Shown here piece after piece: positions 4,145-63,819 of a stretch of 64,000 bases of DNA. Each line of letters opens with the position of its first letter. The first letter of the stretch is position 1. Both the position numbers and the translations under genes were made by a program. The stretch covers positions 186,001-250,000 of the IMG/VR virus record IMGVR_UViG_3300020154_000003. One strand, written 5' to 3'. The notes beneath the pieces are model-generated. The model saw nothing but the letters and a program-made list of their open reading frames with translations, was not told the origin of the DNA and searched no databases.

Positions 4145-4206
4145 TGGTGAAGGGAGAGGGAATCGAACCCCCGATCAAAAACTCTAACCAACTGAGTTAT
4201 CCCTTC
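4145..4206 (-). ncRNA. 62-nt tRNA-like RNA lacking the entire anticodon arm
   Basis: GAAGGGA/TCCCTTC acceptor stem + ACCA, D arm ACTC-AGTTGGTTA-GAGT, 8-nt linker TTTTGATC, T arm GGGGG-TTCGATT-CCCTC. Confidence 0.8.
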
Positions 4207-10097: not shown

Positions 10098-11090
10098 TTA
10101 CTCAACTAATGACAGTTTAGAATAAATGGGGTTTCTTTTTTCATCGTCTTTTCTTGTGAAGAAATCAAAGTAATGCTCGATTCGCCACTTACCCTTCTTC
10201 ACCTTCGCCAGTACTGCATCTGCATAAGTATCTGTTTTAGTACTTATCTCTTTAATAGGTTCTTCTGCTTCCTCCAACACTTTTTTGTCAGCACATTGCC
10301 AACGCCAAACGTCAAGTGAGATCATTCCTATTTGTTTGAATCCCTCAAACTCAATCTCATATTCCTCATCCTTTTCTCCATCGTAACCATACGGATTGGT
10401 TACAATAATTTCAGTACCGTCATCTTTTAAATGAATACTAACACTCATATTACCCATTTGAGCATATCCCACATTTTGCTTGGCTAGGTATTGCATCAGA
10501 ACGTTGCGACCTAACACGGAATTAATGTCTGGATGACCATATCTATTTTTGGGATTAACGTACAGCTTTTCGGTTTTGAAAAAATTTTGAAAAATCAATT
10601 CACCAGAAGGAACCTCAATCTCAGAGACGAGTTTCTTTTTTCTTTTTAATGATTTTGCTTCACATGATGGTATTTCTTCTGGTTTAATTTGATAGTCGTA
10701 TTTACTAATGTTTTCCCTTACTGCACCTTCATCTCTTAATTTCCAATATGCGGGAGTAGGTATGAGACTTAGTGTGGTTTCATCTTTAATGACAATATAC
10801 ATTGTGGCACCACAATCGAAACACTGTCTTTCCATTCCAGTATAGCCAAGATAATCACCAATCTCATAAGCATCTGTCAATGATCTTTTATAGTGCTCCA
10901 ACATCCTAGTTTTATCTGCTTTGGAATCTTTTTGAGATTTGCCTTTACCTGTGGTGTATTCGCGAACCATTTCTTTAAGATGGTTGACTTCTTGGTCTAT
11001 TCTCTCCCCAACATCATGTACGCGATGACCCTTTAAATCAATTTTGATCGTGCCAGCCTTTATGCCGTTGTTAATGTCTTGGATATTCAT
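10098..11090 (-). CDS. 330-aa hypothetical phage protein
   Basis: Long ORF with CxxC; no family recognised. Confidence 0.7.
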   Translation of the reverse strand: MNIQDINNGIKAGTIKIDLKGHRVHDVGERIDQEVNHLKEMVREYTTGKGKSQKDSKADKTRMLEHYKRSLTDAYEIGDYLGYTGMERQCFDCGATMYIVIKDETTLSLIPTPAYWKLRDEGAVRENISKYDYQIKPEEIPSCEAKSLKRKKKLVSEIEVPSGELIFQNFFKTEKLYVNPKNRYGHPDINSVLGRNVLMQYLAKQNVGYAQMGNMSVSIHLKDDGTEIIVTNPYGYDGEKDEEYEIEFEGFKQIGMISLDVWRWQCADKKVLEEAEEPIKEISTKTDTYADAVLAKVKKGKWRIEHYFDFFTRKDDEKRNPIYSKLSLVE

Positions 11091-11452
11091 GTCTTACGAT
11101 TCAGGAGTGTATTCTTTAAGTGCTATGTGATAGTGTCCACTCTTTTCAGGTACAGGAATTTTAAGAATGGTGTCAACGCCATTCATTCTGTAAGCGAGTA
11201 ATGGCGCTCCAGCACCACCGAAAAAGTTTATCACTCCTGCGATATTTTTAAACCGACCATCTGGTTCAGCACAAGGTATGATTTCAGGCCATGATGTTGA
11301 ACGAGAGGAATTCATTACAACAACAAAATCTTTATCCGGGTATTCGTCCATAGCTAGTTTAAGGAACGATACTGCAGTACTCATAGGGATATTAATCCCC
11401 GCATAAATTTCACCATGATTCAAGATGGCTAATACCAGTTCCTTAATTGTTT

Positions 11453-11656
11453 TCATTTGATTAATTTCGGGAGATTCGGTTTCTTCATCCAAGCAGTAAC
11501 ACTTATCAAATTACCATCACGGTCTTCCCAATAAGGTTTCTTACGTTTGTCTGATGGAACTACATAGTGTGCTATGTCAACATCCGTTTCGAATGCGACA
11601 ACCAGTACATCCAACATTGGTTCTGGTGTCTTGCTTTTATCCGTTATCCACTTCAT
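11453..11656 (-). CDS. DUF551-like small phage protein
   Basis: MKWI...PE...DVLV...W...VTAWMKKP.LP. Confidence 0.55.
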   Translation of the reverse strand: MKWITDKSKTPEPMLDVLVVAFETDVDIAHYVVPSDKRKKPYWEDRDGNLISVTAWMKKPNLPKLIK

Positions 11657-11949
11657 TGACTTCGGCAGTTTGAGGTTGATCTTCGTAATAGCACATCGCG
11701 AAGGGGTTCATTTTGAAATCCTTCACGAATTGATATTGATGCTCAGGTGCAATGGCATCGAGTACCTTTCTGATATGGGGTGTATCGTTGATTAAAAAGC
11801 CACCTGTCATGAACTCCACACCATCTTTTTTAATTAGTGCCAAATGATTCTTCCTATTGATTCGGTTAGCCAACAGGGTTACTTCTTCGTAACCATTGGA
11901 GGTGGGAGTAATATGGAGAATTTTCATGGTTTTAAGGTGTTTTCAATAT

Positions 11950-11974
11950 TATACGCATTTCAATGAAAAATGTT
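11950..11974 (-). promoter_or_regulatory. Phage promoter AAC-N16-CGTATA
   Basis: Exact spacing; upstream of ORF 11637..11927. Confidence 0.75.
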
Positions 11975-12233
11975 ATTCAACTAAGAAATCATATAGATCG
12001 TTGACATAGCAAGCATAATTGTCATTCAACCCCCGCACCTCAGAATAGACATCGCGTTCAGATAGATTCTTTAATTGTCGTAATCTCGAATATTTAAAAT
12101 CATTCTTCTCCTTATCCCACACATCAACCCATTTGTTGCCATTCTGCAAATCTTCTCTGACTTTGGCAGAGTATCGATCTATAGGAAATCGTTTATAAAT
12201 AACGAAGGCTACATGTCTAAATTCCTCTTCCAT
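11973..12233 (-). CDS. Paralog family B small protein
   Basis: RYS...WVDVWDKEKNDF...LNDNYACYVNDLYDFL. Confidence 0.7.
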   Translation of the reverse strand: MEEEFRHVAFVIYKRFPIDRYSAKVREDLQNGNKWVDVWDKEKNDFKYSRLRQLKNLSERDVYSEVRGLNDNYACYVNDLYDFLVE

Positions 12234-12494
12234 TTACCGTGTCAATACATAAAATAACGTATTCACATAATCAGTGAATGCAACATTCATTTGGTGAACC
12301 CTATCCTTCAATATTGGACGCAAAGGCAGGTTTGCGATCTCATCTTCTGTCAAATAAACAGACTGATCAACCCAAGTTTGTCTCACTTTATCATACACGT
12401 CAAGGTAACTGCTACCATCACGATGATCGTAACGTTCTCGTATACAATACCTTTCTAAGGGTATCTCATCGAATATTTGTTCAATAGCATCCAA
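12234..12494 (-). CDS. Paralog family B small protein
   Basis: RYCIR...LDVYDKVRQTW...MNVAFTDYVNTLFYVL. Confidence 0.7.
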   Translation of the reverse strand: MDAIEQIFDEIPLERYCIRERYDHRDGSSYLDVYDKVRQTWVDQSVYLTEDEIANLPLRPILKDRVHQMNVAFTDYVNTLFYVLTR

Positions 12495-12570
12495 TCGAGT
12501 AAAAGTAAAGAAATTTGTTTATTTCACCAAATCCTTAATTAAGTAAAGGTTTTAGGTCGGTCGCAGTCAG

Positions 12571-12578
12571 TATTTATA
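12571..12578 (+). promoter_or_regulatory. Putative late-promoter motif TATTTATA
   Basis: 3 nt before ATG 12582; same geometry at 23822. Confidence 0.45.
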
Positions 12579-12581
12579 GAT

Positions 12582-13070
12582 ATGACAATAGTACTGATTC
12601 AATCCCTCATATTTTTAGCCTACATATCAATGGTTATTATTAGATTCGGGGTACTCCCATCAATTTCTGATTCGTGGTATGAATTGCAACCGAAAAAGCA
12701 ATCATACCTATTCACATTTTTTATTTGGGGATTGGCAGTACCAATGTTTTTCGTTGGTACGTTCTGGTATGCTTTGGCTTGTGGTTTTCTTTGTTTTGTT
12801 GGCGTTGCAACTCAGTTCAAAGAAGGTGGTATGACGAAGGTAGTACACAATTGGGGTGCTGCAGGAGGTATCGGGTTAGCTTTACTCGCGCTCTTAATTG
12901 AAGGATTCGTATTCCCGTTGGCGTTTACTTTGCTAGGTATAGCCTTCGTAGTTAAGAAGAAACTTCCCAACAAAATCTGGTGGATTGAAATTATTGCTTT
13001 TGTGAATATTGAATTGGCCTTAATCATAAGGGCAATCATTGAAGCTATCGATCCGTCAGTACTGCTTTAG
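12582..13070 (+). CDS. Multi-pass membrane protein (PSISDSWY motif)
   Basis: 5-6 hydrophobic segments; lone plus-strand gene. Confidence 0.7.
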   Translation: MTIVLIQSLIFLAYISMVIIRFGVLPSISDSWYELQPKKQSYLFTFFIWGLAVPMFFVGTFWYALACGFLCFVGVATQFKEGGMTKVVHNWGAAGGIGLALLALLIEGFVFPLAFTLLGIAFVVKKKLPNKIWWIEIIAFVNIELALIIRAIIEAIDPSVLL

Positions 13071-13523
13071 TGGTGTAGCAGATAGTAGATCATCGACTTC
13101 ACTAATCACACTCTCCACAGACATCTTATCAAACCATATGTCGTAATTCTTAGAAAACGAACCGGGAGGTGTTTTCAACATCTTTGCAGTATCAGGTATT
13201 TGATAAACGAATGGGTGATGCTTTGTAGCATTTGCTTCCATCGCAAGTTGATCATTGAACCATTGCTTGAACTCTTCCATTTTCATGCAATAGACTCTAT
13301 CCATGTGACGAATTCTTATTTTTCGTTTCATGATTTTATATATGTTTTTTTAAGACTTCTCGGACTTTTTTATGGAAGGTTCTACCTTTTCTGAATGATA
13401 CGGAGTGATTCGGTAGAACACCAAGCATTCCATGCTTGTTTAATACGCTATTCGCAGTATTTAATGCATTTTCCAAATGAACGATCTTCATTGCTAATGC
13501 GTATGATGTGTCGCCACGGTCTA

Positions 13524-14213
13524 TCATGTGGTTTGAGTTTTCATCCAGTCTTTAAAATTTTCATATACGTAATCCCAATCAGGATGTGTGATTTTTTCTC
13601 TCGCAGCATTAAAGGCTTTTTCTGCGATAGATAGTGGAACCATAATTTCTTGGAGAGGAATTATTCTAACCTCGTTACGTGAATTTAGTTTCACAACGAA
13701 ACCATCATATCCTTTCCAGTTATCGGTATCATAATCGCAAAGTACCGAGATACAACCGATGCGTCCATCGTTAGCACATACACCCTCAACCTCAAGCAAC
13801 ATCACGTCCTGATCTTTCATTCGTTCAATCTCCATATCACGGAAATGGTCAAATGAAAAGTTCTCTGGTTTAGCTAGTACTTTTTTCCATCCATACAACA
13901 TGGCGTGAGATACTGAGTTATGGGAATCAATAAGAAAAAATTGATTCTTGGCACCAACACCGTTCATGTTATATACATAATCCCCGATTTGAGGTTGTTC
14001 AGTGTCTGATACGAGCAGTGGCTTTAGAAATTTATTACCGATGTGTACCATGTGGTTTGATCGGATGTCGAAATCACAATTCTCTTTCAAGACTTCAACA
14101 GTCCAATTCACAAACACCAATCTAACATCAACAACATACAATGCTGGTCGTTTAAGGCGACCGTTTCCACGATCACTAGATAATCGAGCCTCCTTGATTT
14201 TTATCTCATTCAT
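13524..14213 (-). CDS. Paralog family A hypothetical phage protein
   Basis: KPLLVSDTEQPQIGDY...WKKVLAKPENFS...VKLNS. Confidence 0.75.
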   Translation of the reverse strand: MNEIKIKEARLSSDRGNGRLKRPALYVVDVRLVFVNWTVEVLKENCDFDIRSNHMVHIGNKFLKPLLVSDTEQPQIGDYVYNMNGVGAKNQFFLIDSHNSVSHAMLYGWKKVLAKPENFSFDHFRDMEIERMKDQDVMLLEVEGVCANDGRIGCISVLCDYDTDNWKGYDGFVVKLNSRNEVRIIPLQEIMVPLSIAEKAFNAAREKITHPDWDYVYENFKDWMKTQTT

Positions 14214-14525
14214 AAATCTTGTTGCCGTTGGTTTTTATGTTTCTGTATAGTCTCAACTAATTTCTTTATCTTATGATCAACATTTAAAGCTTCTGCTATC
14301 TTGTGGGAAACATTCGCATCTATTGCAATTTGTGCATCCTCCAAGTTGTCCCAAAAAGTAGTGAAATCATCATGAACCTTAAACGTTTTATCGCTCATGG
14401 ATTCCCATTTCGGTGATCCTATTGATCTTATGTCCCGGAAGAAATTAATACATTCCTGCTGACGTTTGGTCAGATCATCAACGATAGATATTAAACTTTC
14501 AGTTGTCATTTTAACACGTTTAAAG

Positions 14526-14682
14526 TGGCGAAGGGAGGGACTCGAACCCTCATTCTGTAGATCGGTCTTGCTCGTCTACAGCGTTGGTCTCAGCCTTGGG
14601 CAAGAAATCGTAAGCCTTTACCTCACGACCTATCCATATTGGCCTGATCCACAACTGCGTTTACCAATTTCGCCACCTTGCC
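14526..14682 (-). ncRNA. 157-nt tRNA-like RNA (class II, Leu-type body) with the anticodon arm replaced by an extended structured domain
   Basis: GGCAAGG/CCTT(C)GCC-A acceptor, D arm GCG-AAATTGGTAAA-CGC, ~70-nt insert closed by GTTG/CAAC, variable arm CTGTAGA/TCTACAG, T arm GAGGG-TTCGAGT-CCCTC. Confidence 0.75.
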
Positions 14683-14692
14683 AAAATATCTT

Positions 14693-15052
14693 TTAATTAA
14701 CTGAAATAAATTTCATAACCGCCCTATCATATTCTTTGAAGCCCTCACTGTTTTTAATGCTAACCCATTTCAAATAATCGTCAACTTTTTCAACGTCTTC
14801 TTTTCTTATCACATTCACTGTGATAAGCTTTTTGTGATTCATAAATTTATTCACATCGATAACTCCTTTGATGGTTGCCACATTTAATTTTCTTAATTGT
14901 GGTGTAGTAGCTGTCGTAATCACAAATCCCTTTGGTGGCTTACCTGATTTAACACAATCAATAAGAACCTCATTACTTAGTTTCAATTCTTCTATTGACG
15001 AATATATGATCTTAGGTTTATTCTTTACCTTCTTCGCCATTTCAATTACCAA
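14693..15052 (-). CDS. Hypothetical basic protein carrying the C-terminal tag
   Basis: Ends GFKEYDRAVMKFISVN. Confidence 0.6.
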   Translation of the reverse strand: MVIEMAKKVKNKPKIIYSSIEELKLSNEVLIDCVKSGKPPKGFVITTATTPQLRKLNVATIKGVIDVNKFMNHKKLITVNVIRKEDVEKVDDYLKWVSIKNSEGFKEYDRAVMKFISVN

Positions 15053-16018
15053 TTATTAAAGATGAAACGATATTTTTGATTGGGACTACCTATCTCCGCA
15101 ACTTCATCATTCTTAACGTTCATATAAACGTAATCTCGTCTAGTACCATCCACCGTCACTTCCTTAATGAACGAATGGTTACATTGGGCTTCAATTTGAA
15201 ATTTTTCTTCTTCATTGAAAAATGCTTTGAAGATTTCAAGCACATTACTATTACTTGAAATGTAATTGTCAATATAAATACCTGAAGGTTTCAGCGTATA
15301 GTGATACGCAATAATGCCTTTATAGTGGAACTGGTTAGAGATTAATTCCTGATAACTTCTCGCGCTTTTGTAATCGTTGGGCTTAATACCCCGTATAGGA
15401 AGATATATTGATTCCATACTTATGTGGGTTGTTACCATAACAACCGGCTCATTTATTGTATCAGTCATATAATTCTTTGAGTATGATTTTTCGACAATGA
15501 TTTTTTTCTTCAACGACAATCTCACCTGTCTTTCTATTTTTGAATTCGACTCGCTCTATCACACCACCATCAATAGGGAGTGGTATGATGTTTATCACTT
15601 CATGATCATGGAGAATGATTGTCATTCGAAGGTCTTCCTCAAATGGAAATTCCAACAAGAAATCACCAACATTACCCTTTTCAATTTCCTGACTGCTTTT
15701 AAGCCATTTGAAATTGGGTGTTTTAAGTTTTTGAACTGCAGCCTCCTTCATGAAGTCCAATACTTCATCTGGTATAGTGTGATCGGTCTTCCTGATCTTA
15801 GCCCATGCGTCAATAATGTCTCGTTCTTTCATATTAATATTTTCCTAAACCGACATAATCATCTTCTGGAACGTCAGTATAATCAAATTTGATGGTGATA
15901 GTTTTATTGACTTGATCAACTTCAATTATTTTATCCTCCCATCTATAGACCTCTCCATTTATGGTTGCCAAGCATTCATCCAATTCATTGGTGATTCGCT
16001 TTGCGATGTCTTCGTTTG

Positions 16019-16237
16019 TCATTTGATTAGGAAATTTTCAACTGAATCGCATGGAACTGTCGCAATACTCACAGTATAGAACCCCGAATGTGTGAATGAG
16101 GAAATCTGTGCAAAACATAATCCAGTACGATCATCCTTAAAATATGTGATTCTATCCTTTACTTCTTCGGATGTGCTAACTTCAGCATTGCAACTAATTA
16201 GTGTAATTGAGAGTAGAATTAGAATAATTTTTTTCAT
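16019..16237 (-). CDS. Small lipoprotein
   Basis: MKKIILILLSITLISC signal peptide II with lipobox. Confidence 0.65.
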   Translation of the reverse strand: MKKIILILLSITLISCNAEVSTSEEVKDRITYFKDDRTGLCFAQISSFTHSGFYTVSIATVPCDSVENFLIK

Positions 16238-16481
16238 TTAATTTCGTTAATCATTGCCTTCAATTTTGCTATTTCATCATTCAAAGCAACAATTGTGTTT
16301 GCCGCTAATTGATGGAATTTGGTGTACGCATCGCGCTGTAGTTTGGCTTCAATTTGATAGTAAACCAATCTATCATAAAGCCATTCCCATTCTTTGGCAT
16401 TCTCCAAAAGAGCATTAACATCCTGTCCATCAGGATGATGTTCCTTGATAAAAGAAAGAAATAATGGATTCATATGTGAAT

Positions 16482-16506
16482 TATACGTAAAACGTATAAA
16501 AATGTT
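16482..16506 (-). promoter_or_regulatory. Phage promoter AAC-N16-CGTATA
   Basis: Exact spacing; upstream of ORF 16234..16473. Confidence 0.75.
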
Positions 16507-16885
16507 TTTATTTACATAAAATACGTCTTTTTAACGTTTTTATGCTTTAAAAACACGGAAACCATATTTATTCACATATGGGTCGCTTTCCTCTTGCCAT
16601 TGAAGAGGATCAACGTGCTTGCGGGTTGGCTTGGGCAGGTCTTTAATGTCTTTGACAACACAATAATACTTGTCGTCAACCGCATACACTGCGCGGGTAA
16701 ACCTTCCGGGTTGGTAAGTGTAATCTCTGAGATCACGCATATCCATCCCTAAATGGGTGGCTAACGCCTCTTTGTTACTTTTCATAATCGGTTCAGTTAT
16801 AGGAAGGATCAAATATAGGATAAAATCTGGAAGAACAAATAAAACCCCATATTTTTATGGCTAAACCACCCTACGACTGGCAAGA

Positions 16886-26702: not shown

Positions 26703-26872
26703 GGATGATGACAGGACTCGAACCTGCATCGGAAGTCGATTGCCTCTATCCCGAACCTAAGTGTTTTTATTACCTTACTAAATTAAGGGAGCATTGAATG
26801 CGATCAGCTTAATCGAGAAGGATTGTGGTGTCAGTCCACGGGTAGCGGATAACCCATTTCGCCACATCATCC
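26703..26872 (-). ncRNA. 170-nt tRNA-like RNA with the anticodon loop replaced by a four-hairpin domain
   Basis: GGATGATG/CATCATCC acceptor, D arm GCG-AAATGGGTTATC-CGC, CCCG/CGGG stem enclosing ~85 nt, variable arm GAGG/CTTC, T arm GCAGG-TTCGAGT-CCTGT. Confidence 0.75.
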
Positions 26873-40275: not shown

Positions 40276-42369
40276 TTAGAGGCCACTACCGTTTCTTATC
40301 GCAGCTTCCTTAAGAAGTTGATTCAACATAATATTTTGTTTATTCAACACATCCACATTAACAACATCAGTGACACCCTCATGACAACCAGTTGCATTAT
40401 TGACATGTATTCTTATTTTGGCTATCTCATGTTTAATTCTAGGATCATTTTTCTTCAAAGATGAATTAGAAATATATACTAAATGATTGATTTTAGTTGA
40501 TATTTCGCTTCTTAATTTTCTAGCTTTTTCCGCAGGACTTATGTTATCGTCAACATTTTCATTTGATAGTAATGGCATTTGAGTAATTTCAAACTTAGGT
40601 TTGGATTCTAGTTTAGCTTTTTCAATTTCAATCAAAATATGTCTAGTTTGATCAATTGACATACCTAATCGGGAAGCACACATCCCAATAACATTCTCCG
40701 TAACATTTTCGTCATTATTTGTTGATATGCCATTTTCTGTAAAACTTATGCCATGAACTGAAATATCACTGTAATTTAATAACGGTAATGGTTGAGTCCC
40801 CTCAAATTCTGTATCAGAACTAATCATTTTATCAAATTCTTCTTCTCCGATCAAATGCTTCATATTAAATGTAATGTCTCTGGCAAGTCGTGTAAGTGGA
40901 GCATAATCAAACATGAAAAAATAAGCTAGATCATATATACGTGTACCTTTACTATCAACTAAATTGACGTTGGGGTTTCGTACACATCTACCAGAAACTT
41001 GACTAAAAAATAATGGTGTTGTTTTTGCACTCAAATACACAATACATCGTATTCTTGGTATATCAACGCCCTCACTAATCATATTCACTGAAATCAACCA
41101 TTTCTTATTTGATTTCTTAAATTCTTGAATTTTTTGATGAGAATCTTCATTTTCTGTATTAGAAACTATTAATGATGCATCTGCAGAAGGCAATGAATTG
41201 TAAAGATTAGTCGCATATTCAATTTTATCACAAACAACCAAAATTGCTGCGTTAGGCATATATTTCCTTACTTCATTTACCTTATTATTAGCTTCATGAA
41301 GTATTGTCTTAATTGCATTAGTTAGATGGTTTGACGATATATTGAGTAATGCACCATATTTACGTGAATCTTCAATAGAATCACTTAATATTTCTTGTTT
41401 GATACCACCAATTTCAAAATCTCTCAAATGGAAAAATTGGATTGGACAACATACATTATCACGTACTGCTTGAGCATACGAATATGAATAATCAGTAACT
41501 AATTCCTCCACTAAAGATTCACCAACAAGTTTGGTCACATACTTTACGTTAGGTATTGGATTTCTATCCGATCTGTATGGTGTACCAGTTAAATTCAATA
41601 TAAATTTCACATATTTGCTTAATTCTCTTATCGCATCCCCCCACGATTTATTATCCCCTAAATGGTGTACTTCATCACAAATTAGCAACACTTTCATATT
41701 TGCGTTCTTTATGATGTTAATAATAAACTCAAGATTATTTTGTTGGCTTAAGGTTGCATATGTTAATGAGATGCCTTGATAGTATTTATCTGTGGCATAT
41801 GCGATATTGCTCCAATCATTTCTGAATTTGTATTTCTCATTTAATACAATTCCTCCTTTTCTAAAGGTCTCTTCCCAATTATGTTTAATACTTATTGTTG
41901 GAGATATTGCAATAACTTGAAATTCTTCTCTTGAAACAAATAATTTTGCACTTTCAAATCCTGCACGGGTTTTACCCCCTCCAACGCTTGCATGTAAGAG
42001 AAATGCATTCCAATCTGGATTGGGAGAAAAATGATTATTCAAATACCGATTAAAAGGCAGACTATAAAAATCTTGTTGCCACGGACGCAATCCTTCAATT
42101 ATCTCTGGTTGAATTAATGTCTGCTCTTCTCTTATTTTCGGTATTCTTTTCTTCATTTCTAATTGATTAAAACTATATTTATTGCCTTTTTTTAAATTAC
42201 ATGGTTCACAAAGTGCTTGTCCGTTTACTAAGGTTGTTTCACCCCCTTTACTATAGGGCATGATATGATCGCTATGCCATCCATCTTCAAGAGGATTTCC
42301 GCAACGCTTACATTTTCCTTTCGCATCAATATATAGCTGCTGTTGTTGTCGTTTGGAAAAAAATCTCAT
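40276..42369 (-). CDS. HNH endonuclease fused to an SF2 (ResIII/DEAD-like) helicase
   Basis: CKRC...DHIMPYSKGG.T...N.QALCEPCN; GGGKT, DEVHH, TGTP, EGVDIP, QVSGRCVR. Confidence 0.85.
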   Translation of the reverse strand: MRFFSKRQQQQLYIDAKGKCKRCGNPLEDGWHSDHIMPYSKGGETTLVNGQALCEPCNLKKGNKYSFNQLEMKKRIPKIREEQTLIQPEIIEGLRPWQQDFYSLPFNRYLNNHFSPNPDWNAFLLHASVGGGKTRAGFESAKLFVSREEFQVIAISPTISIKHNWEETFRKGGIVLNEKYKFRNDWSNIAYATDKYYQGISLTYATLSQQNNLEFIINIIKNANMKVLLICDEVHHLGDNKSWGDAIRELSKYVKFILNLTGTPYRSDRNPIPNVKYVTKLVGESLVEELVTDYSYSYAQAVRDNVCCPIQFFHLRDFEIGGIKQEILSDSIEDSRKYGALLNISSNHLTNAIKTILHEANNKVNEVRKYMPNAAILVVCDKIEYATNLYNSLPSADASLIVSNTENEDSHQKIQEFKKSNKKWLISVNMISEGVDIPRIRCIVYLSAKTTPLFFSQVSGRCVRNPNVNLVDSKGTRIYDLAYFFMFDYAPLTRLARDITFNMKHLIGEEEFDKMISSDTEFEGTQPLPLLNYSDISVHGISFTENGISTNNDENVTENVIGMCASRLGMSIDQTRHILIEIEKAKLESKPKFEITQMPLLSNENVDDNISPAEKARKLRSEISTKINHLVYISNSSLKKNDPRIKHEIAKIRIHVNNATGCHEGVTDVVNVDVLNKQNIMLNQLLKEAAIRNGSGL

Positions 42370-47356: not shown

Positions 47357-48373
47357 TTACTTTTTGCTGTCATAATGTTTGTTAATAATTTTGAAACTAC
47401 CTCTGCTATGCTTCACTACAACACCTTCAAACGGTTTTCCGTTTATTTTATTGATGCCAATTGAATATTTTTCAACAAGTTCACGGGTGAGAATGACATT
47501 TTCTTCGATCATGTCAGCAATCGGTAAGCCAAGTTCTTTAGCCACATTTACAAAGTAGTATTTATGACCTTTTTCAGCATATTCACGTTCATCCACCAAA
47601 TATGTGGCAAACATGGCCCAACCTTTTGGAAGCTTTGAATGCGGATTATTCTCATTAGCCTGAATACCTTCACCATAGCTTTCGCCCCGGATGCATAAAG
47701 ATACATTATTCTCTTTGCAAAATGCAACAAGTTTGTTCTTTAAATCATATCTTTCAATATGAGCGGTGTAATTATTCGAGAATATTTCATGTAATTCTAA
47801 AGAACGGCCCAATACTGAAAATTTATCATCCGTCAATTGGTACAAGTATGACGATGACTGACCATCCACTTTTAATTGAATATCAACAAGTTCACCATAT
47901 GGTAATTTATTCACCATATTCTCGAAACGCTCTTCATCGGTTTTAGGAACACCATATGGCAGTCCACCCTTCGCATTAAGTTCTTGAGGTACTGGTGGTT
48001 CGTAATGGGTAACGCCCAACAAACCAGAAACATCGTCACCTATATTGAATTTAGGTAAGTGTTCTCTCACATTCTCAGGAAGAATATCAAAAGGCACAAT
48101 AATACCTTCAGACCACATGTTTCTTAGCTTAACGGCTTTGATGCGCTTTGGCGAATATTTTCTATAATCTTCAGTCCACGGTTCAACAGGCAACAACGAG
48201 TCAGGTCTAATGTAGACTACTGTATCGCCTTCTTTATATAAACCTAGTTGAGTGATGCATTGAAAACCTAGAATTTTTACTAACTCAAGTCTGTCTGCCT
48301 CAGGGTGTTTGGTAATCGAATCGATTTTTTCGATTGTAGCATCTTTATTTTTGCTACCTTCTTGTATTTGCAT
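47357..48373 (-). CDS. RNA ligase, DRB0094 family (Rnl2-like)
   Basis: N-terminal HPEADRLE OB-like domain, KTDEER, motif I KVDG, RGE, EGVV, FKII. Confidence 0.85.
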   Translation of the reverse strand: MQIQEGSKNKDATIEKIDSITKHPEADRLELVKILGFQCITQLGLYKEGDTVVYIRPDSLLPVEPWTEDYRKYSPKRIKAVKLRNMWSEGIIVPFDILPENVREHLPKFNIGDDVSGLLGVTHYEPPVPQELNAKGGLPYGVPKTDEERFENMVNKLPYGELVDIQLKVDGQSSSYLYQLTDDKFSVLGRSLELHEIFSNNYTAHIERYDLKNKLVAFCKENNVSLCIRGESYGEGIQANENNPHSKLPKGWAMFATYLVDEREYAEKGHKYYFVNVAKELGLPIADMIEENVILTRELVEKYSIGINKINGKPFEGVVVKHSRGSFKIINKHYDSKK

Positions 48374-63729: not shown

Positions 63730-63819
63730 TAGGGGTGAGAGGATTCGAACCTCCACTCTTCGGGGCTTCAGTAATGCAACCACAGCCCCGATGTTTTATC
63801 CAGTTAAACTACCTCCCCT
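63730..63819 (-). ncRNA. 90-nt tRNA-like RNA with an extended anticodon arm
   Basis: AGGGGAGG/CACCCCT-A acceptor (imperfect), D arm GTTT-AACTGGATA-AAAC, 8-bp stem TCGGGGCT/AGCCCCGA capped by 16 nt, T arm GGAGG-TTCGAAT-CCTCT. Confidence 0.75.

What the first reader, a model, noticed from the sequence alone, without database searches (positions are those of the whole stretch)
14526..14682. Leu-type tRNA body carrying a long rod-like insert and an oversized variable arm
Seen: the anticodon stem continues as GTTG/CAAC and TCAG(G)CC/GGCTGA and ends in hairpin TCGTGAG-GTAAAGG-CTTACGA. The variable arm is CTGTAGA-13 nt-TCTACAG, and the acceptor stem has a single bulged C. Established: bacterial tRNA introns are group I self-splicing introns far longer than this insert, and many LeuRS enzymes ignore the anticodon. 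Inference: it might be chargeable yet unable to decode.
Basis: partly seen in the sequence, partly recalled or inferred. Interest (0 to 1): 0.7.

Follow-up and report, generated by a model that had tools for sequence, protein, structure and literature searches.

The report
Phage tRNA-like RNA carrying cargo arms
A 366-kb soil phage carries a 157-base RNA gene with the upper half of a leucine tRNA. A long, highly conserved rod sits where the anticodon arm should be, so it almost certainly cannot read codons. It is most likely a stable tRNA-shaped carrier for another RNA function, and similar genes are common in phage metagenomes.

Summary
On the minus strand, window 14682-14526 folds without constraints into acceptor stem (one bulged C), class-II D arm, 73-nt rod in place of the anticodon arm, 27-nt variable-arm hairpin and canonical T arm. 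ARAGORN and Rfam do not call it a tRNA.

It is not decay. In a sister lineage whose neighbouring genes are about 75% identical in DNA, the element differs at 5 of 156 positions. The rod and variable arm have one change, C-G to U-G. The high identity starts exactly at G1.

No excision yields a normal anticodon arm, so decoding is very unlikely. The acceptor pair 3:70 and the discriminator change in the sister lineage, so leucylation is doubtful.

The same phage has at least four more aberrant tRNA bodies. A sample of IMG/VR gave about 40 distinct Leu-type bodies with unrelated 39-178-nt middles.

The closest precedent is T4 species 1 RNA (rnaC), which has the same layout without a D arm and an unknown function.

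Best reading: a non-decoding tRNA-derived RNA whose tRNA chassis gives processing and stability, and whose conserved arms carry the function. The partner is unknown. I found no covariation and no expression data.

The parts
14526..14682 (-). Whole tRNA-like RNA gene ('E2'), 157 nt, from G1 (14682) to discriminator A (14526). CCA is not encoded; the next base is C.
   Evidence: Searches give the fold. Searches show 97% identity to the sister lineage, and one search shows about 75% identity in the flanks.
14676..14682 (-). Acceptor stem, 5' strand: GGCAAGG.
   Evidence: It pairs with 14527-14534. Related strains diverge or break immediately upstream of 14682.
14657..14675 (-). U8 G9 plus the class-II D arm (GCG / AAAUUGGUAAA / CGC), with A14, A15 and G18 G19.
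   Evidence: Read from the sequence. The exact 19-nt motif occurs in 32 distinct canonical phage tRNA-Leu genes in IMG/VR.
14583..14655 (-). 73-nt rod in place of the anticodon arm. It contains helices GUUG/CAAC, G-C, tandem G.A/A.G, UCAG/CUGA and CC/GG, then an internal loop.
   Evidence: MFE and centroid. There is one substitution in three lineages, C41U at window 14642, which keeps the pair as U.G.
14608..14628 (-). Tip hairpin of the rod: a 7-bp stem and the 7-nt loop GUAAAGG. The loop is anticodon-loop-like (U at loop position 2, purine at 6) but lies far from the canonical position.
   Evidence: It is invariant in all lineages.
14555..14581 (-). Oversized variable-arm hairpin: CUGUAGA(CG)...(CG)A-UCUACAG.
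   Evidence: z = -4.8. Invariant between lineages.
14535..14551 (-). T arm: GAGGG UUCGAGU CCCUC.
   Evidence: the only part matched by the Rfam tRNA and tmRNA models. The only variant is G59C in the loop, at window 14541.
14527..14534 (-). Acceptor stem, 3' strand: CCUU-C-GCC, with bulged C153 at 14530. G154 (14529) is C in lineage B.
14210..14509 (-). Downstream ORF (99 aa, no known family). Its start codon lies 16 nt after the element, and it is linked to the element in all lineages.
14693..15052 (-). Upstream ORF (119 aa, no known family). It ends 10 nt before G1. In related strains it is replaced or absent.
   Evidence: One search shows a joint from 14682 to 15047. One search shows loose ends at 14682 and 14686.

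Best explanation
This is a functional, non-decoding RNA gene derived from a class-II (Leu-type) tRNA.

The tRNA 'top half' is kept: acceptor/T-arm stack, D arm, and the D-loop/T-loop elbow nucleotides.

Inferred, not shown: the RNA is cut out of the polycistronic minus-strand transcript by the tRNA-processing enzymes (RNase P at the 5' end, RNase Z or exonucleases at the 3' end). It is then completed by the phage's own CCA-adding enzyme and folds into a nuclease-resistant L-shape.

The anticodon arm is replaced by a 73-nt rod, and the variable arm is enlarged. These two 'cargo' arms are the most strongly conserved part. I infer that they carry the function by binding a specific partner. A protein is more likely than an RNA, because I found no antisense target. 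The action would be in trans during infection, plausibly in the tRNA-centred conflict between phage and host.

The RNA does not deliver an amino acid to the ribosome.
For: Shown:
1. The fold is the unconstrained MFE and centroid. The tertiary-contact nucleotides are in place: U8, A14, A15/U48, G18 G19, U54 U55 C56, A58, G53-C61.
2. Purifying selection is strong. Lineage B is about 75% identical across 6-20 kb of synteny, and its neighbouring proteins are 63% and 79% identical. The element differs at 5 of 156 positions, and positions 27-131 differ at 2 of 105 (P = 6e-13 and 2e-10).
3. In an intermediate lineage found in four soil runs there are 3 changes inside the element, against 16 in 192 flanking bases.
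4. The conserved block coincides with the RNA. The upstream sequence is non-homologous right up to G1.
5. The substitutions fall in the D-loop (position 20), T-loop (position 59) and a linker. One more is a C-G to U.G change in the rod.
6. No canonical anticodon arm exists, and none can be produced by excision.
7. The phage encodes a CCA-adding (PolyA_pol) domain. Its tRNA genes, like this element, lack an encoded CCA.
8. The element is not unique. The same genome has four more aberrant tRNA bodies. One of them, a 59-nt body with no anticodon arm, is 60/60 identical between lineages while its flanks have diverged.
9. About 40 distinct Leu-type bodies with unrelated 39-178-nt middles occur in the sampled IMG/VR contigs. 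They seem far more frequent per base in viral contigs than in GTDB genomes: 29 against 9 hits, a rough comparison since the viral collection's total size is my estimate.
10. T4 species 1 RNA has the same layout.

Inferred: tRNA-type processing, stability, and action in trans through the arms.
Against: - There is no expression or end-mapping data. The runs that hold the phage are assembled contigs with even coverage.
- There is no covariation, because the element is too conserved: 45 of 47 pairs never vary. The rod's pairing therefore rests on thermodynamics with z of only about -2.
- Near-identity of a helix-rich region could also reflect recent transfer of the cassette between lineages rather than site-by-site constraint.
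- The acceptor helix is imperfect (a bulge, and one pair lost in lineage B), and positions -1 and 73 can pair. This might impair RNase P site choice.
- A competing 8-bp terminal helix exists.
- No partner was identified. The neighbouring ORFs have no known family, and the protein-RNA complex job was not folded.
Confidence: 0.55

Rival explanations
1. Decoy or inhibitor for a tRNA-targeting host defence or toxin, such as an anticodon nuclease, an acceptor-end modifying toxin or a Schlafen-type tRNase. The tRNA body would be bound, but there is no cleavable anticodon loop, so the RNA would titrate the enzyme. This is a specific version of the best explanation.
For: - tRNA-targeting immunity and phage tRNA-based escape are well documented (papers listed; PMC13056530 read).
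- The phage invests heavily in tRNA biology: 54 tRNAs, a CCA-adding enzyme and two RNA-ligase-family genes.
- Several anticodon-less tRNA bodies are conserved in the same genome.
Against: - A simple decoy needs no 73-nt rod conserved at nearly every base.
- Middles differ completely between phages.
- No defence system or target is known for this uncultured host.
- There is no abundance data.
Confidence: 0.15
2. Cis-acting processing signal ('tRNA punctuation'). The tRNA-like fold exists only so that RNase P/Z cut the polycistronic mRNA between the upstream ORF and the 99-aa ORF, setting the latter's 5' end and stability. The excised RNA would have no function of its own.
For: - The element lies 10 nt after one ORF and 16 nt before the next, on the same strand.
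- It has no promoter or terminator of its own above chance.
- It is always linked to the downstream ORF, while the upstream neighbour varies.
Against: - A processing signal needs only the acceptor/T-arm minihelix. Here the acceptor end is the least conserved part, and the rod and variable arm are the most conserved.
- Paralogous elements sit in other contexts, one of them inside the tRNA cluster.
Confidence: 0.12
3. A chargeable but non-decoding Leu acceptor. LeuRS would load it, and the Leu-RNA would serve a non-ribosomal purpose or sequester LeuRS or EF-Tu.
For: - Leu-type D arm, A15/U48, a long variable arm, and A73 in lineages A and A'.
- From established knowledge, bacterial LeuRS does not read the anticodon.
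Against: - In lineage B the discriminator is U (or C in another register) and pair 3:70 is lost.
- The acceptor stem carries a bulge.
- The phage has no L/F-transferase and no class-Ia synthetase gene.
- Discriminators other than A occur in 12 of 49 non-canonical relatives of the class.
Confidence: 0.08
4. An interrupted tRNA gene. The rod would be an intervening sequence removed by an unknown, possibly phage-encoded cut-and-ligate pathway, giving a decoding tRNA.
For: - The phage has two RNA-ligase-family genes.
- Some other members of the class, such as L009, L045 and L126, do retain a perfect Leu(UAA)- or UUA-type anticodon arm next to a 75-nt insert.
Against: - For this element no excision yields a canonical arm. 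The best by eye is GUUGG-GCUGAGA-CCAAC, with C33 instead of U33. ARAGORN on all deletions gives mutually inconsistent solutions that reuse the variable arm.
- 73 nt is far below group I size, and there is no Rfam intron or ribozyme hit.
- The geometry is not bulge-helix-bulge, and the phage has no RtcB.
- An intron would not be expected to be the best-conserved part.
Confidence: 0.05
5. A decaying tRNA-Leu pseudogene disrupted by an insertion, or a chance fold.
For: - tRNA finders do not recognise it.
- The acceptor stem is imperfect.
Against: - 97% identity against 75% flanks, with the conserved block co-extensive with the RNA.
- All tertiary-contact nucleotides are intact.
Confidence: 0.03

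Closest known systems
Bacteriophage T4 species 1 RNA (rnaC; also rnaD/species 2), small stable RNAs of the T4 tRNA region
   Same: - Phage-encoded and about 140 nt.
- The predicted fold has the same order of elements: an imperfect terminal helix formed by the 5' and 3' ends, a long irregular rod, a second hairpin of about 26 nt, and a canonical T arm (CCGGG-UUCGAAU-CCCGG) abutting the 3' strand (z = -4.6).
- Its biological role is still unknown (PMC3014915).
   Different: - rnaC has no recognisable D arm and sits inside the tRNA cluster, whereas this element has a perfect class-II D arm and lies 75 kb from the cluster.
- There is no sequence similarity (blastn against 50,697 phage records, including T4, found nothing).
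- Homology is therefore not shown, only the same architecture.
Canonical class-II tRNA-Leu of bacteria and phages
   Same: Acceptor/T-arm stack; U8; 3-bp D stem with an 11-nt loop identical to that of 32 distinct phage tRNA-Leu genes; A15/U48; a variable-arm hairpin; A73; no encoded CCA, like the phage's own tRNAs.
   Different: - The anticodon arm is replaced by a 73-nt rod.
- The variable arm is 27 nt with an 8-13-nt loop.
- The acceptor has a bulged C.
- ARAGORN and Rfam do not recognise it.
- The D arm differs from those of this phage's own four decoding tRNA-Leu genes.
tmRNA
   Same: The topology matches: a tRNA-like acceptor/T-arm domain whose 'anticodon side' is a long helix leading to other RNA modules. 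It is a non-decoding tRNA mimic.
   Different: No G3.U70, a full D stem is present, there are no pseudoknots or tag reading frame, and it is 157 nt rather than 300-400 nt. ARAGORN tmRNA mode is negative, and the Rfam tmRNA model matches only the T arm at 11.9 bits.
tRNA-Leu(UAA) genes with a group I intron
   Same: A Leu-type tRNA gene with extra sequence in the anticodon region. One such case, L073, surfaced in the same motif search with 258 nt between the D and T arms.
   Different: The insert here is 73 nt, has no flanking anticodon-loop halves, and has no group I core (no Rfam hit).
tRNA-scaffolded RNAs: gammaherpesvirus MHV68 tRNA-miRNA (TMER) genes and the engineered 'tRNA scaffold' for recombinant RNA
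   Same: A tRNA chassis recruits the tRNA-processing enzymes and protects an unrelated RNA module. In the engineered scaffold the cargo replaces the anticodon stem-loop, exactly as here. This rests on my own knowledge; the scaffold papers PMC3753655 and PMC3401473 were listed but not read.
   Different: Those are eukaryotic-viral or man-made. In TMERs the hairpins follow the tRNA-like unit rather than replacing its anticodon arm. No natural bacteriophage example of the anticodon-arm-replacement type turned up in my literature searches.
Bacterial and phage Y-RNA-like YrlA (Ro/Rsr-bound tRNA mimics)
   Same: A tRNA-like elbow (D and T arms) joined to a long helix with a bulged nucleotide. Some are phage-encoded (own knowledge).
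   Different: The topology is permuted: in YrlA the RNA ends lie in the long helix and the acceptor-like stem is closed. There is no Rfam hit, and the phage has no TROVE/Ro gene.

Membership tests
Elongator tRNA (tRNA-Leu) | 7-bp acceptor stem contiguous with a 5-bp T stem | tested here: inconclusive
   There are 7 pairs but with a bulged C153. In lineage B, C3-G154 becomes C.C.
Elongator tRNA (tRNA-Leu) | D and T arms with the conserved elbow nucleotides (U8, A14, G18 G19, U54 U55 C56, A58) | tested here: met
   Read directly from the sequence. The T arm is matched by the Rfam models. The D arm is identical to that of canonical phage tRNA-Leu genes.
Elongator tRNA (tRNA-Leu) | 5-bp anticodon stem and 7-nt loop with U33 and an anticodon at the canonical position | tested here: not met
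   A 73-nt rod sits there instead. ARAGORN is negative with and without introns. Rfam tRNA scores 14.2 bits against a cut-off of 29. The deletion scan gave no coherent solution.
Elongator tRNA (tRNA-Leu) | Conserved discriminator A73 (LeuRS identity) and aminoacylation | tested here: inconclusive
   The discriminator is A in lineages A and A', and U in lineage B. Charging is not testable with these tools.
tmRNA | G3.U70, D loop without a stem, pseudoknots, tag-encoding reading frame | tested here: not met
   Pair 3:70 is C-G, a full D stem is present, and the length is 157 nt. ARAGORN -m is negative. The Rfam tmRNA model matches only the T arm.
Group I intron in a tRNA gene | Intron of 200 nt or more with a P3-P8 core, inserted in the anticodon loop | tested here: not met
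   The insert is 73 nt, there is no Intron_gpI hit at E up to 10, and no anticodon-loop remnants flank it.
Archaeal/eukaryal-type protein-spliced tRNA intron | Bulge-helix-bulge motif (3-nt bulges on opposite strands around a 4-bp helix) | tested here: not met
   The 4-bp helix UCAG/CUGA is flanked by a symmetric G.A/A.G loop on one side and a 1-nt bulge on the other. The phage has no RtcB.
YrlA / Y RNA | RNA ends in the Ro-binding helix, a closed acceptor-like stem, and association with Ro/Rsr | tested here: not met
   The ends are in the acceptor stem. There is no Rfam hit and no TROVE gene in the phage. The host's Rsr status is unknown.
T4 rnaC-type phage stable RNA (an informal group, not a curated family) | Phage RNA of about 140-160 nt with a terminal helix, long rod, second hairpin and canonical T arm | tested here: met
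   Predicted folds of both RNAs have this layout.
T4 rnaC-type phage stable RNA (an informal group, not a curated family) | Sequence homology to T4 rnaC; co-transcription and processing with tRNAs | tested here: not met
   No blastn similarity. The element lies outside the tRNA cluster. Processing is not testable here.

The most novel reading that the evidence does not exclude
The element may be one example of a widespread and apparently undescribed class of phage 'cargo tRNAs'. In this class a Leu-type tRNA chassis has its anticodon arm, and sometimes its variable arm, replaced by diverse, lineage-specific structured RNA modules. Phages would be using this as a natural expression, processing and stabilisation scaffold for small functional RNAs, for example inhibitors of host tRNA-directed defences. 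T4 species 1 RNA would be the long-known but unexplained first member.
Probability: 0.3. Interest if true: 0.8.

Novelty: new variant of a known kind. Interest (0 to 1): 0.62.

Why it matters
Phage tRNA genes are currently read either as codon-supply genes or as escape copies for anticodon nucleases. In both views the anticodon is the point.

Here a jumbo phage keeps at least five tRNA-shaped genes that cannot decode. In two of them (this one and the 59-nt armless body) selection is as strong as on a working tRNA. In this one it is strongest on the non-tRNA arms.

If the chassis-plus-cargo reading is right, three things follow:
- It gives a comparative handle on the 50-year-old question of what T4 RNA C and RNA D are for.
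- It shows that tRNA finders miss a sizeable class. About a third of the closed genes carrying this D-arm motif in an unbiased IMG/VR sample had an aberrant middle of 40-199 nt.
- It supplies natural designs for tRNA-scaffolded RNAs.

Tried and rejected
Homologue searches
- Searches for homologues beyond two sister lineages all failed. These were: blastn against INPHARED phages; an exact hairpin pattern in IMG/VR; flanking-protein scans of IMG/VR; a D-arm + gap + T-loop pattern in JGI metagenomes, which returned only the window's own contig and an unrelated tandem tRNA pair; and two searches of the 5.8-billion-protein set with the neighbouring ORFs, which returned only lineage B. No covariation test was therefore possible.

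Known families
- Known RNA families are rejected. Rfam found nothing for the element at gathering score or at E up to 10, apart from the T arm. It also found no ribozyme or intron in 14 loci holding other members of the class.
- The intron reading is rejected for this element.

Target and partner
- I found no antisense target: there is no complementarity of 13 nt or more between the insert and the phage genome, other than the antisense strands of other tRNA genes.
- No partner genes were found. The phage has no RtcB, TROVE/Ro, class-Ia aaRS, L/F-transferase or reverse transcriptase. The neighbouring ORFs have no Pfam or PHROG family.

Other readings
- The 76-aa plus-strand ORF 14466-14696 that overlaps the element is rejected as the reason for conservation. 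Its ends lie in diverged sequence, and neighbouring coding DNA is only about 75% identical.
- No promoter or terminator of the element's own stands out above shuffles.
- Resemblances of the variable-arm loop to the sarcin-ricin loop, and of the rod to a k-turn or a Ro-binding helix, were considered by eye and dropped as too weak.

Class and literature
- RNAalifold on one family of the class gave a non-tRNA fold and no support.
- Seven literature searches found no description of this class. An eighth retrieved the T4 rnaC papers, and Fremin & Bhatt 2023 note unspecified tRNA-like candidates in IMG/VR.

Full report
**Context**

The window is bases 186001-250000 of a 366,038-bp IMG/VR virus record from a soil metagenome. 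CheckV rates the record complete. GC content is about 37%.

ARAGORN finds 54 tRNA genes in the genome. Almost all lie in a cluster at 89-126 kb, two of them carry the amber-suppressor anticodon CUA, and none has an encoded CCA. The phage encodes a PolyA_pol/CCA-adding domain and two RNA-ligase-family genes.

Genes around the finding are short, tightly packed, on the minus strand, have no known family, and lack Shine-Dalgarno motifs. The Dda-like helicase has its nearest cultured relatives, at about 35% identity, in Flavobacterium and Bacteroides phages. A Bacteroidota host is a reasonable guess and no more than that.

**The observation**

The RNA lies on the minus strand. All the stated helices are present.
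- Acceptor: GGCAAGG pairs with CCUU-C-GCC, with one bulged C.
- U8 G9, then a 3-bp D stem with the loop AAAUUGGUAAA.
- A rod at positions 28-100, made of GUUG/CAAC, a bulged U, G-C, tandem G.A/A.G, UCAG/CUGA, a bulged G, CC/GG, an internal loop, and the tip hairpin UCGUGAG-GUAAAGG-CUUACGA.
- A variable-arm hairpin, CUGUAGA...UCUACAG.
- A T arm, GAGGG-UUCGAGU-CCCUC.

Folding the 157-mer without constraints returns exactly this structure as both the MFE and the centroid, at -53.1 kcal/mol. Thermodynamic significance is modest for the whole RNA and for the rod (z about -2) and strong for the variable arm (z = -4.8). With two extra 3' bases a competing terminal helix wins.

ARAGORN does not call the element, with or without introns. 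The Rfam tRNA and tmRNA models match only the T arm.

**Conservation**

Conservation is the strongest evidence that the element is real. Three lineages are available.
- Lineage A is the window.
- Lineage A' consists of contigs in four soil runs. It has only three variant sites inside the element: C41U, A130U and G142C. Over the same stretch it has 16 variant sites in 192 flanking bases. Contigs break or diverge exactly at 14682-14686, and one contig joins 14682 to 15047, which removes the upstream ORF.
- Lineage B was found through the 63%-identical homologue of the downstream ORF. It is syntenic over 20 kb at about 75% DNA identity.

In lineage B the element differs at 5 of 156 positions plus the discriminator:
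- U20C in the D loop;
- C41U, which turns C41-G89 into a U.G pair;
- A130U in the linker;
- G142C at T-loop position 59;
- G154C, which breaks C3-G154.

The probability of 5 or fewer differences at 24% divergence is 6e-13. For the 105 nt between the D and T arms (2 differences) it is 2e-10. Upstream, homology stops at G1, so the conserved block is the RNA itself. Because 45 of 47 pairs never vary, no covariation test is possible.

**What it is not**

- It is not a decoder. No canonical anticodon arm exists. A scan of every internal deletion with ARAGORN gave only mutually inconsistent solutions that reuse the variable arm. The best excision by eye leaves a loop with C33 instead of U33.
- It is not a group I intron. 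The insert is 73 nt and has no Rfam hit.
- It is not a bulge-helix-bulge intron. The geometry is wrong, and the phage has no RtcB.
- It is not tmRNA.
- It is not YrlA. The topology is permuted, and the phage has no Ro gene.
- It is not a pseudogene, given the conservation.

The acceptor end is the part that changes in lineage B: the discriminator goes from A to U, and pair 3:70 is lost. In another register lineage B has a 7-layer stem with a C.C mismatch and discriminator C. The phage also has no L/F-transferase and no class-Ia synthetase.

**It is not alone in this genome**

I wrote a script that looks for a T arm, acceptor closure and a D arm while allowing inserts up to 400 nt. In this genome it found the following.
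- Genome 115090-115263 (+), 174 nt, inside the tRNA cluster. It has a normal-sized hairpin with loop CGGUCUC and an insert of about 95 nt in the variable arm.
- The finding itself.
- Window 26703-26871 (-), 169 nt.

Rfam adds two more.
- Window 4148-4206 (-): a 59-nt tRNA body with no anticodon arm.
- Window 63730-63818 (-): an 89-nt body with a 7-bp stem and a loop of about 17 nt.

The 59-nt body is 60/60 identical between lineages A and B while its flanks have diverged. The 169-nt element shows about 13 differences in a region that is 84% identical overall. The three long elements share a D arm of the type GUGGCGAAAU(U/G)GG, which differs from the D arms of the phage's four decoding tRNA-Leu genes.

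**It is not alone among phages**

Of the 90 genes in that sample whose acceptor stems close, 34 (27 distinct) have 40-199 nt between the D and T arms instead of the normal 23-35 nt.

A second pattern, aimed at inserts of 55-85 nt, hit 29 viral contigs. It hit 9 of 185,579 GTDB species genomes. Some of those are MAGs in which the anticodon arm is a near-perfect hairpin of about 20 bp.

Pooling both scans gives 32 distinct canonical tRNA-Leu genes and 49 distinct non-canonical elements, of which about 40 have middles of 39-178 nt. A73 is present in 37 of the 49.

The middles are unrelated between families. Rfam recognises no ribozyme or intron in them. In one pair, L016 and L153, nearly the same middle sits in different acceptor stems. 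A few families (L009, L045, L126) keep an intact UAA or UUA anticodon arm beside a 75-nt insert, so the class is heterogeneous.

**Closest precedent**

T4 species 1 RNA (rnaC, 139 nt) folds with z = -4.6. Its predicted fold has an imperfect terminal helix, a long irregular rod, a 10-bp hairpin and a canonical T arm. That is the same order of elements as here, without the D arm. Its role is still unknown (PMC3014915). There is no sequence similarity between the two.

A large-scale survey noted unspecified tRNA-like candidates in IMG/VR (PMC10690425). My other literature searches found no description of tRNA bodies with replaced anticodon arms in phages.

**Mechanism proposed**

Shown: the tRNA top half is intact; the cargo arms are the most constrained part; there is no decoding arm; the element is embedded in an operon without its own promoter or terminator above chance; and the phage has a CCA-adding enzyme.

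Inferred: the RNA is excised by RNase P and a 3' processing enzyme, receives CCA, and persists as an L-shaped RNA. Its rod and variable arm then bind a partner. I found no antisense target of 13 nt or more in the phage genome, so a protein or a host RNA is the more likely partner.

Inhibition or titration of a tRNA-directed host enzyme is an attractive special case, but it does not explain why nearly every base of the rod is fixed. Recent exchange of the cassette between lineages could exaggerate the apparent constraint. Even so, the exchanged unit would be exactly the RNA.

**Verdict**

- I file it as a new variant of a known kind, the phage tRNA-derived stable RNA of the T4 rnaC type. There is a reasonable chance that it represents a broad, unrecognised class.
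- Interest: 0.62.

Noticed in passing
window 26703-26871 (-): A second long tRNA-like gene, 169 nt. It has acceptor GAUGAUG/CAUCAUC, a class-II D arm, about 115 nt of other structure, and a canonical T arm. In lineage B it shows about 13 differences, including G.U to G-C in the T stem, within a region that is 84% identical.
   Followed up: partly
window 4148-4206 (-): A 59-nt tRNA body with acceptor, D and T arms but no anticodon arm (an 8-nt linker instead). Rfam tRNA scores 45 bits, yet ARAGORN misses it. It is 60/60 identical between lineages A and B while the flanks have diverged, and the encoded CCA is not conserved.
   Followed up: partly
window 63730-63818 (-): An 89-nt tRNA-like gene with a 7-bp 'anticodon' stem, a loop of about 17 nt, and an A.A mismatch in the acceptor stem. 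Rfam tRNA scores 44 bits; ARAGORN calls it only when introns are allowed.
   Followed up: no
G000:C1:115090-115263 (+), outside the window: A 174-nt Leu-type body inside the main tRNA cluster. It has a normal-sized hairpin (loop CGGUCUC, G at position 33) and an insert of about 95 nt closed by GGGGAG/CUCCCC in the variable arm. The insert holds a partial copy of the D-arm region.
   Followed up: no
G000:C1:123540-123613 and 125586-125659 (+), outside the window: Two tRNAs with anticodon CUA (amber suppressors). They suggest that TAG may be read through or recoded in part of this phage's genes.
   Followed up: no
window 47357-48373 (-): A 338-aa protein with an OB-fold (PHA02142) and an RNA_ligase (PF09414) domain. 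A second RNA-ligase-family gene lies next to the tRNA cluster at genome 111338-111799. Together they suggest tRNA repair capacity.
   Followed up: partly
window 14599-14604 (-), RNA positions 79-84: The rod's 3' internal loop contains CUUGCC, a perfect complement of the acceptor 5' strand GGCAAG (1-6). In addition, GUGGCGAA (7-14) can pair with the 3' end UUCGCCAC. These are possible alternative conformers, or coincidence.
   Followed up: partly
window 10098-16812 (-): None of 18 consecutive likely genes has a Shine-Dalgarno-like motif upstream, and their leaders are A/U-rich. This is typical of Bacteroidota hosts.
   Followed up: partly
L009:7280-7441 (-), L045:877-1038 (-), L126:4510-4675 (+): An IMG/VR family of 162-166-nt Leu-type genes. 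It has a 75-nt insert between the D arm and an intact anticodon arm, whose loop switches between CUUAAAA (Leu UAA) and CUUUAAA/UUUUAAA (UUA, ochre-suppressor type).
   Followed up: no
L157:6090-6179 (-), L158:5717-5812 (+), L164:6394-6488 (+): Bacterial MAG contigs (Woeseiaceae, Patescibacteria, Thalassospira) carry tRNA-Leu bodies with ordinary acceptor stems. CCA is encoded in two of them (L157, L164). The anticodon arm is replaced by a long hairpin, near-perfect and about 20 bp in L157.
   Followed up: no
L018:5938-6409 (-): A tmRNA gene encoded on a phage contig (Rfam 71 bits). It lies about 300 nt from one of the long-insert Leu-type elements.
   Followed up: no
window 40276-42369 (-): A 697-aa protein that combines an N-terminal HNH-endonuclease-like region with a DNA helicase.
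   Followed up: no
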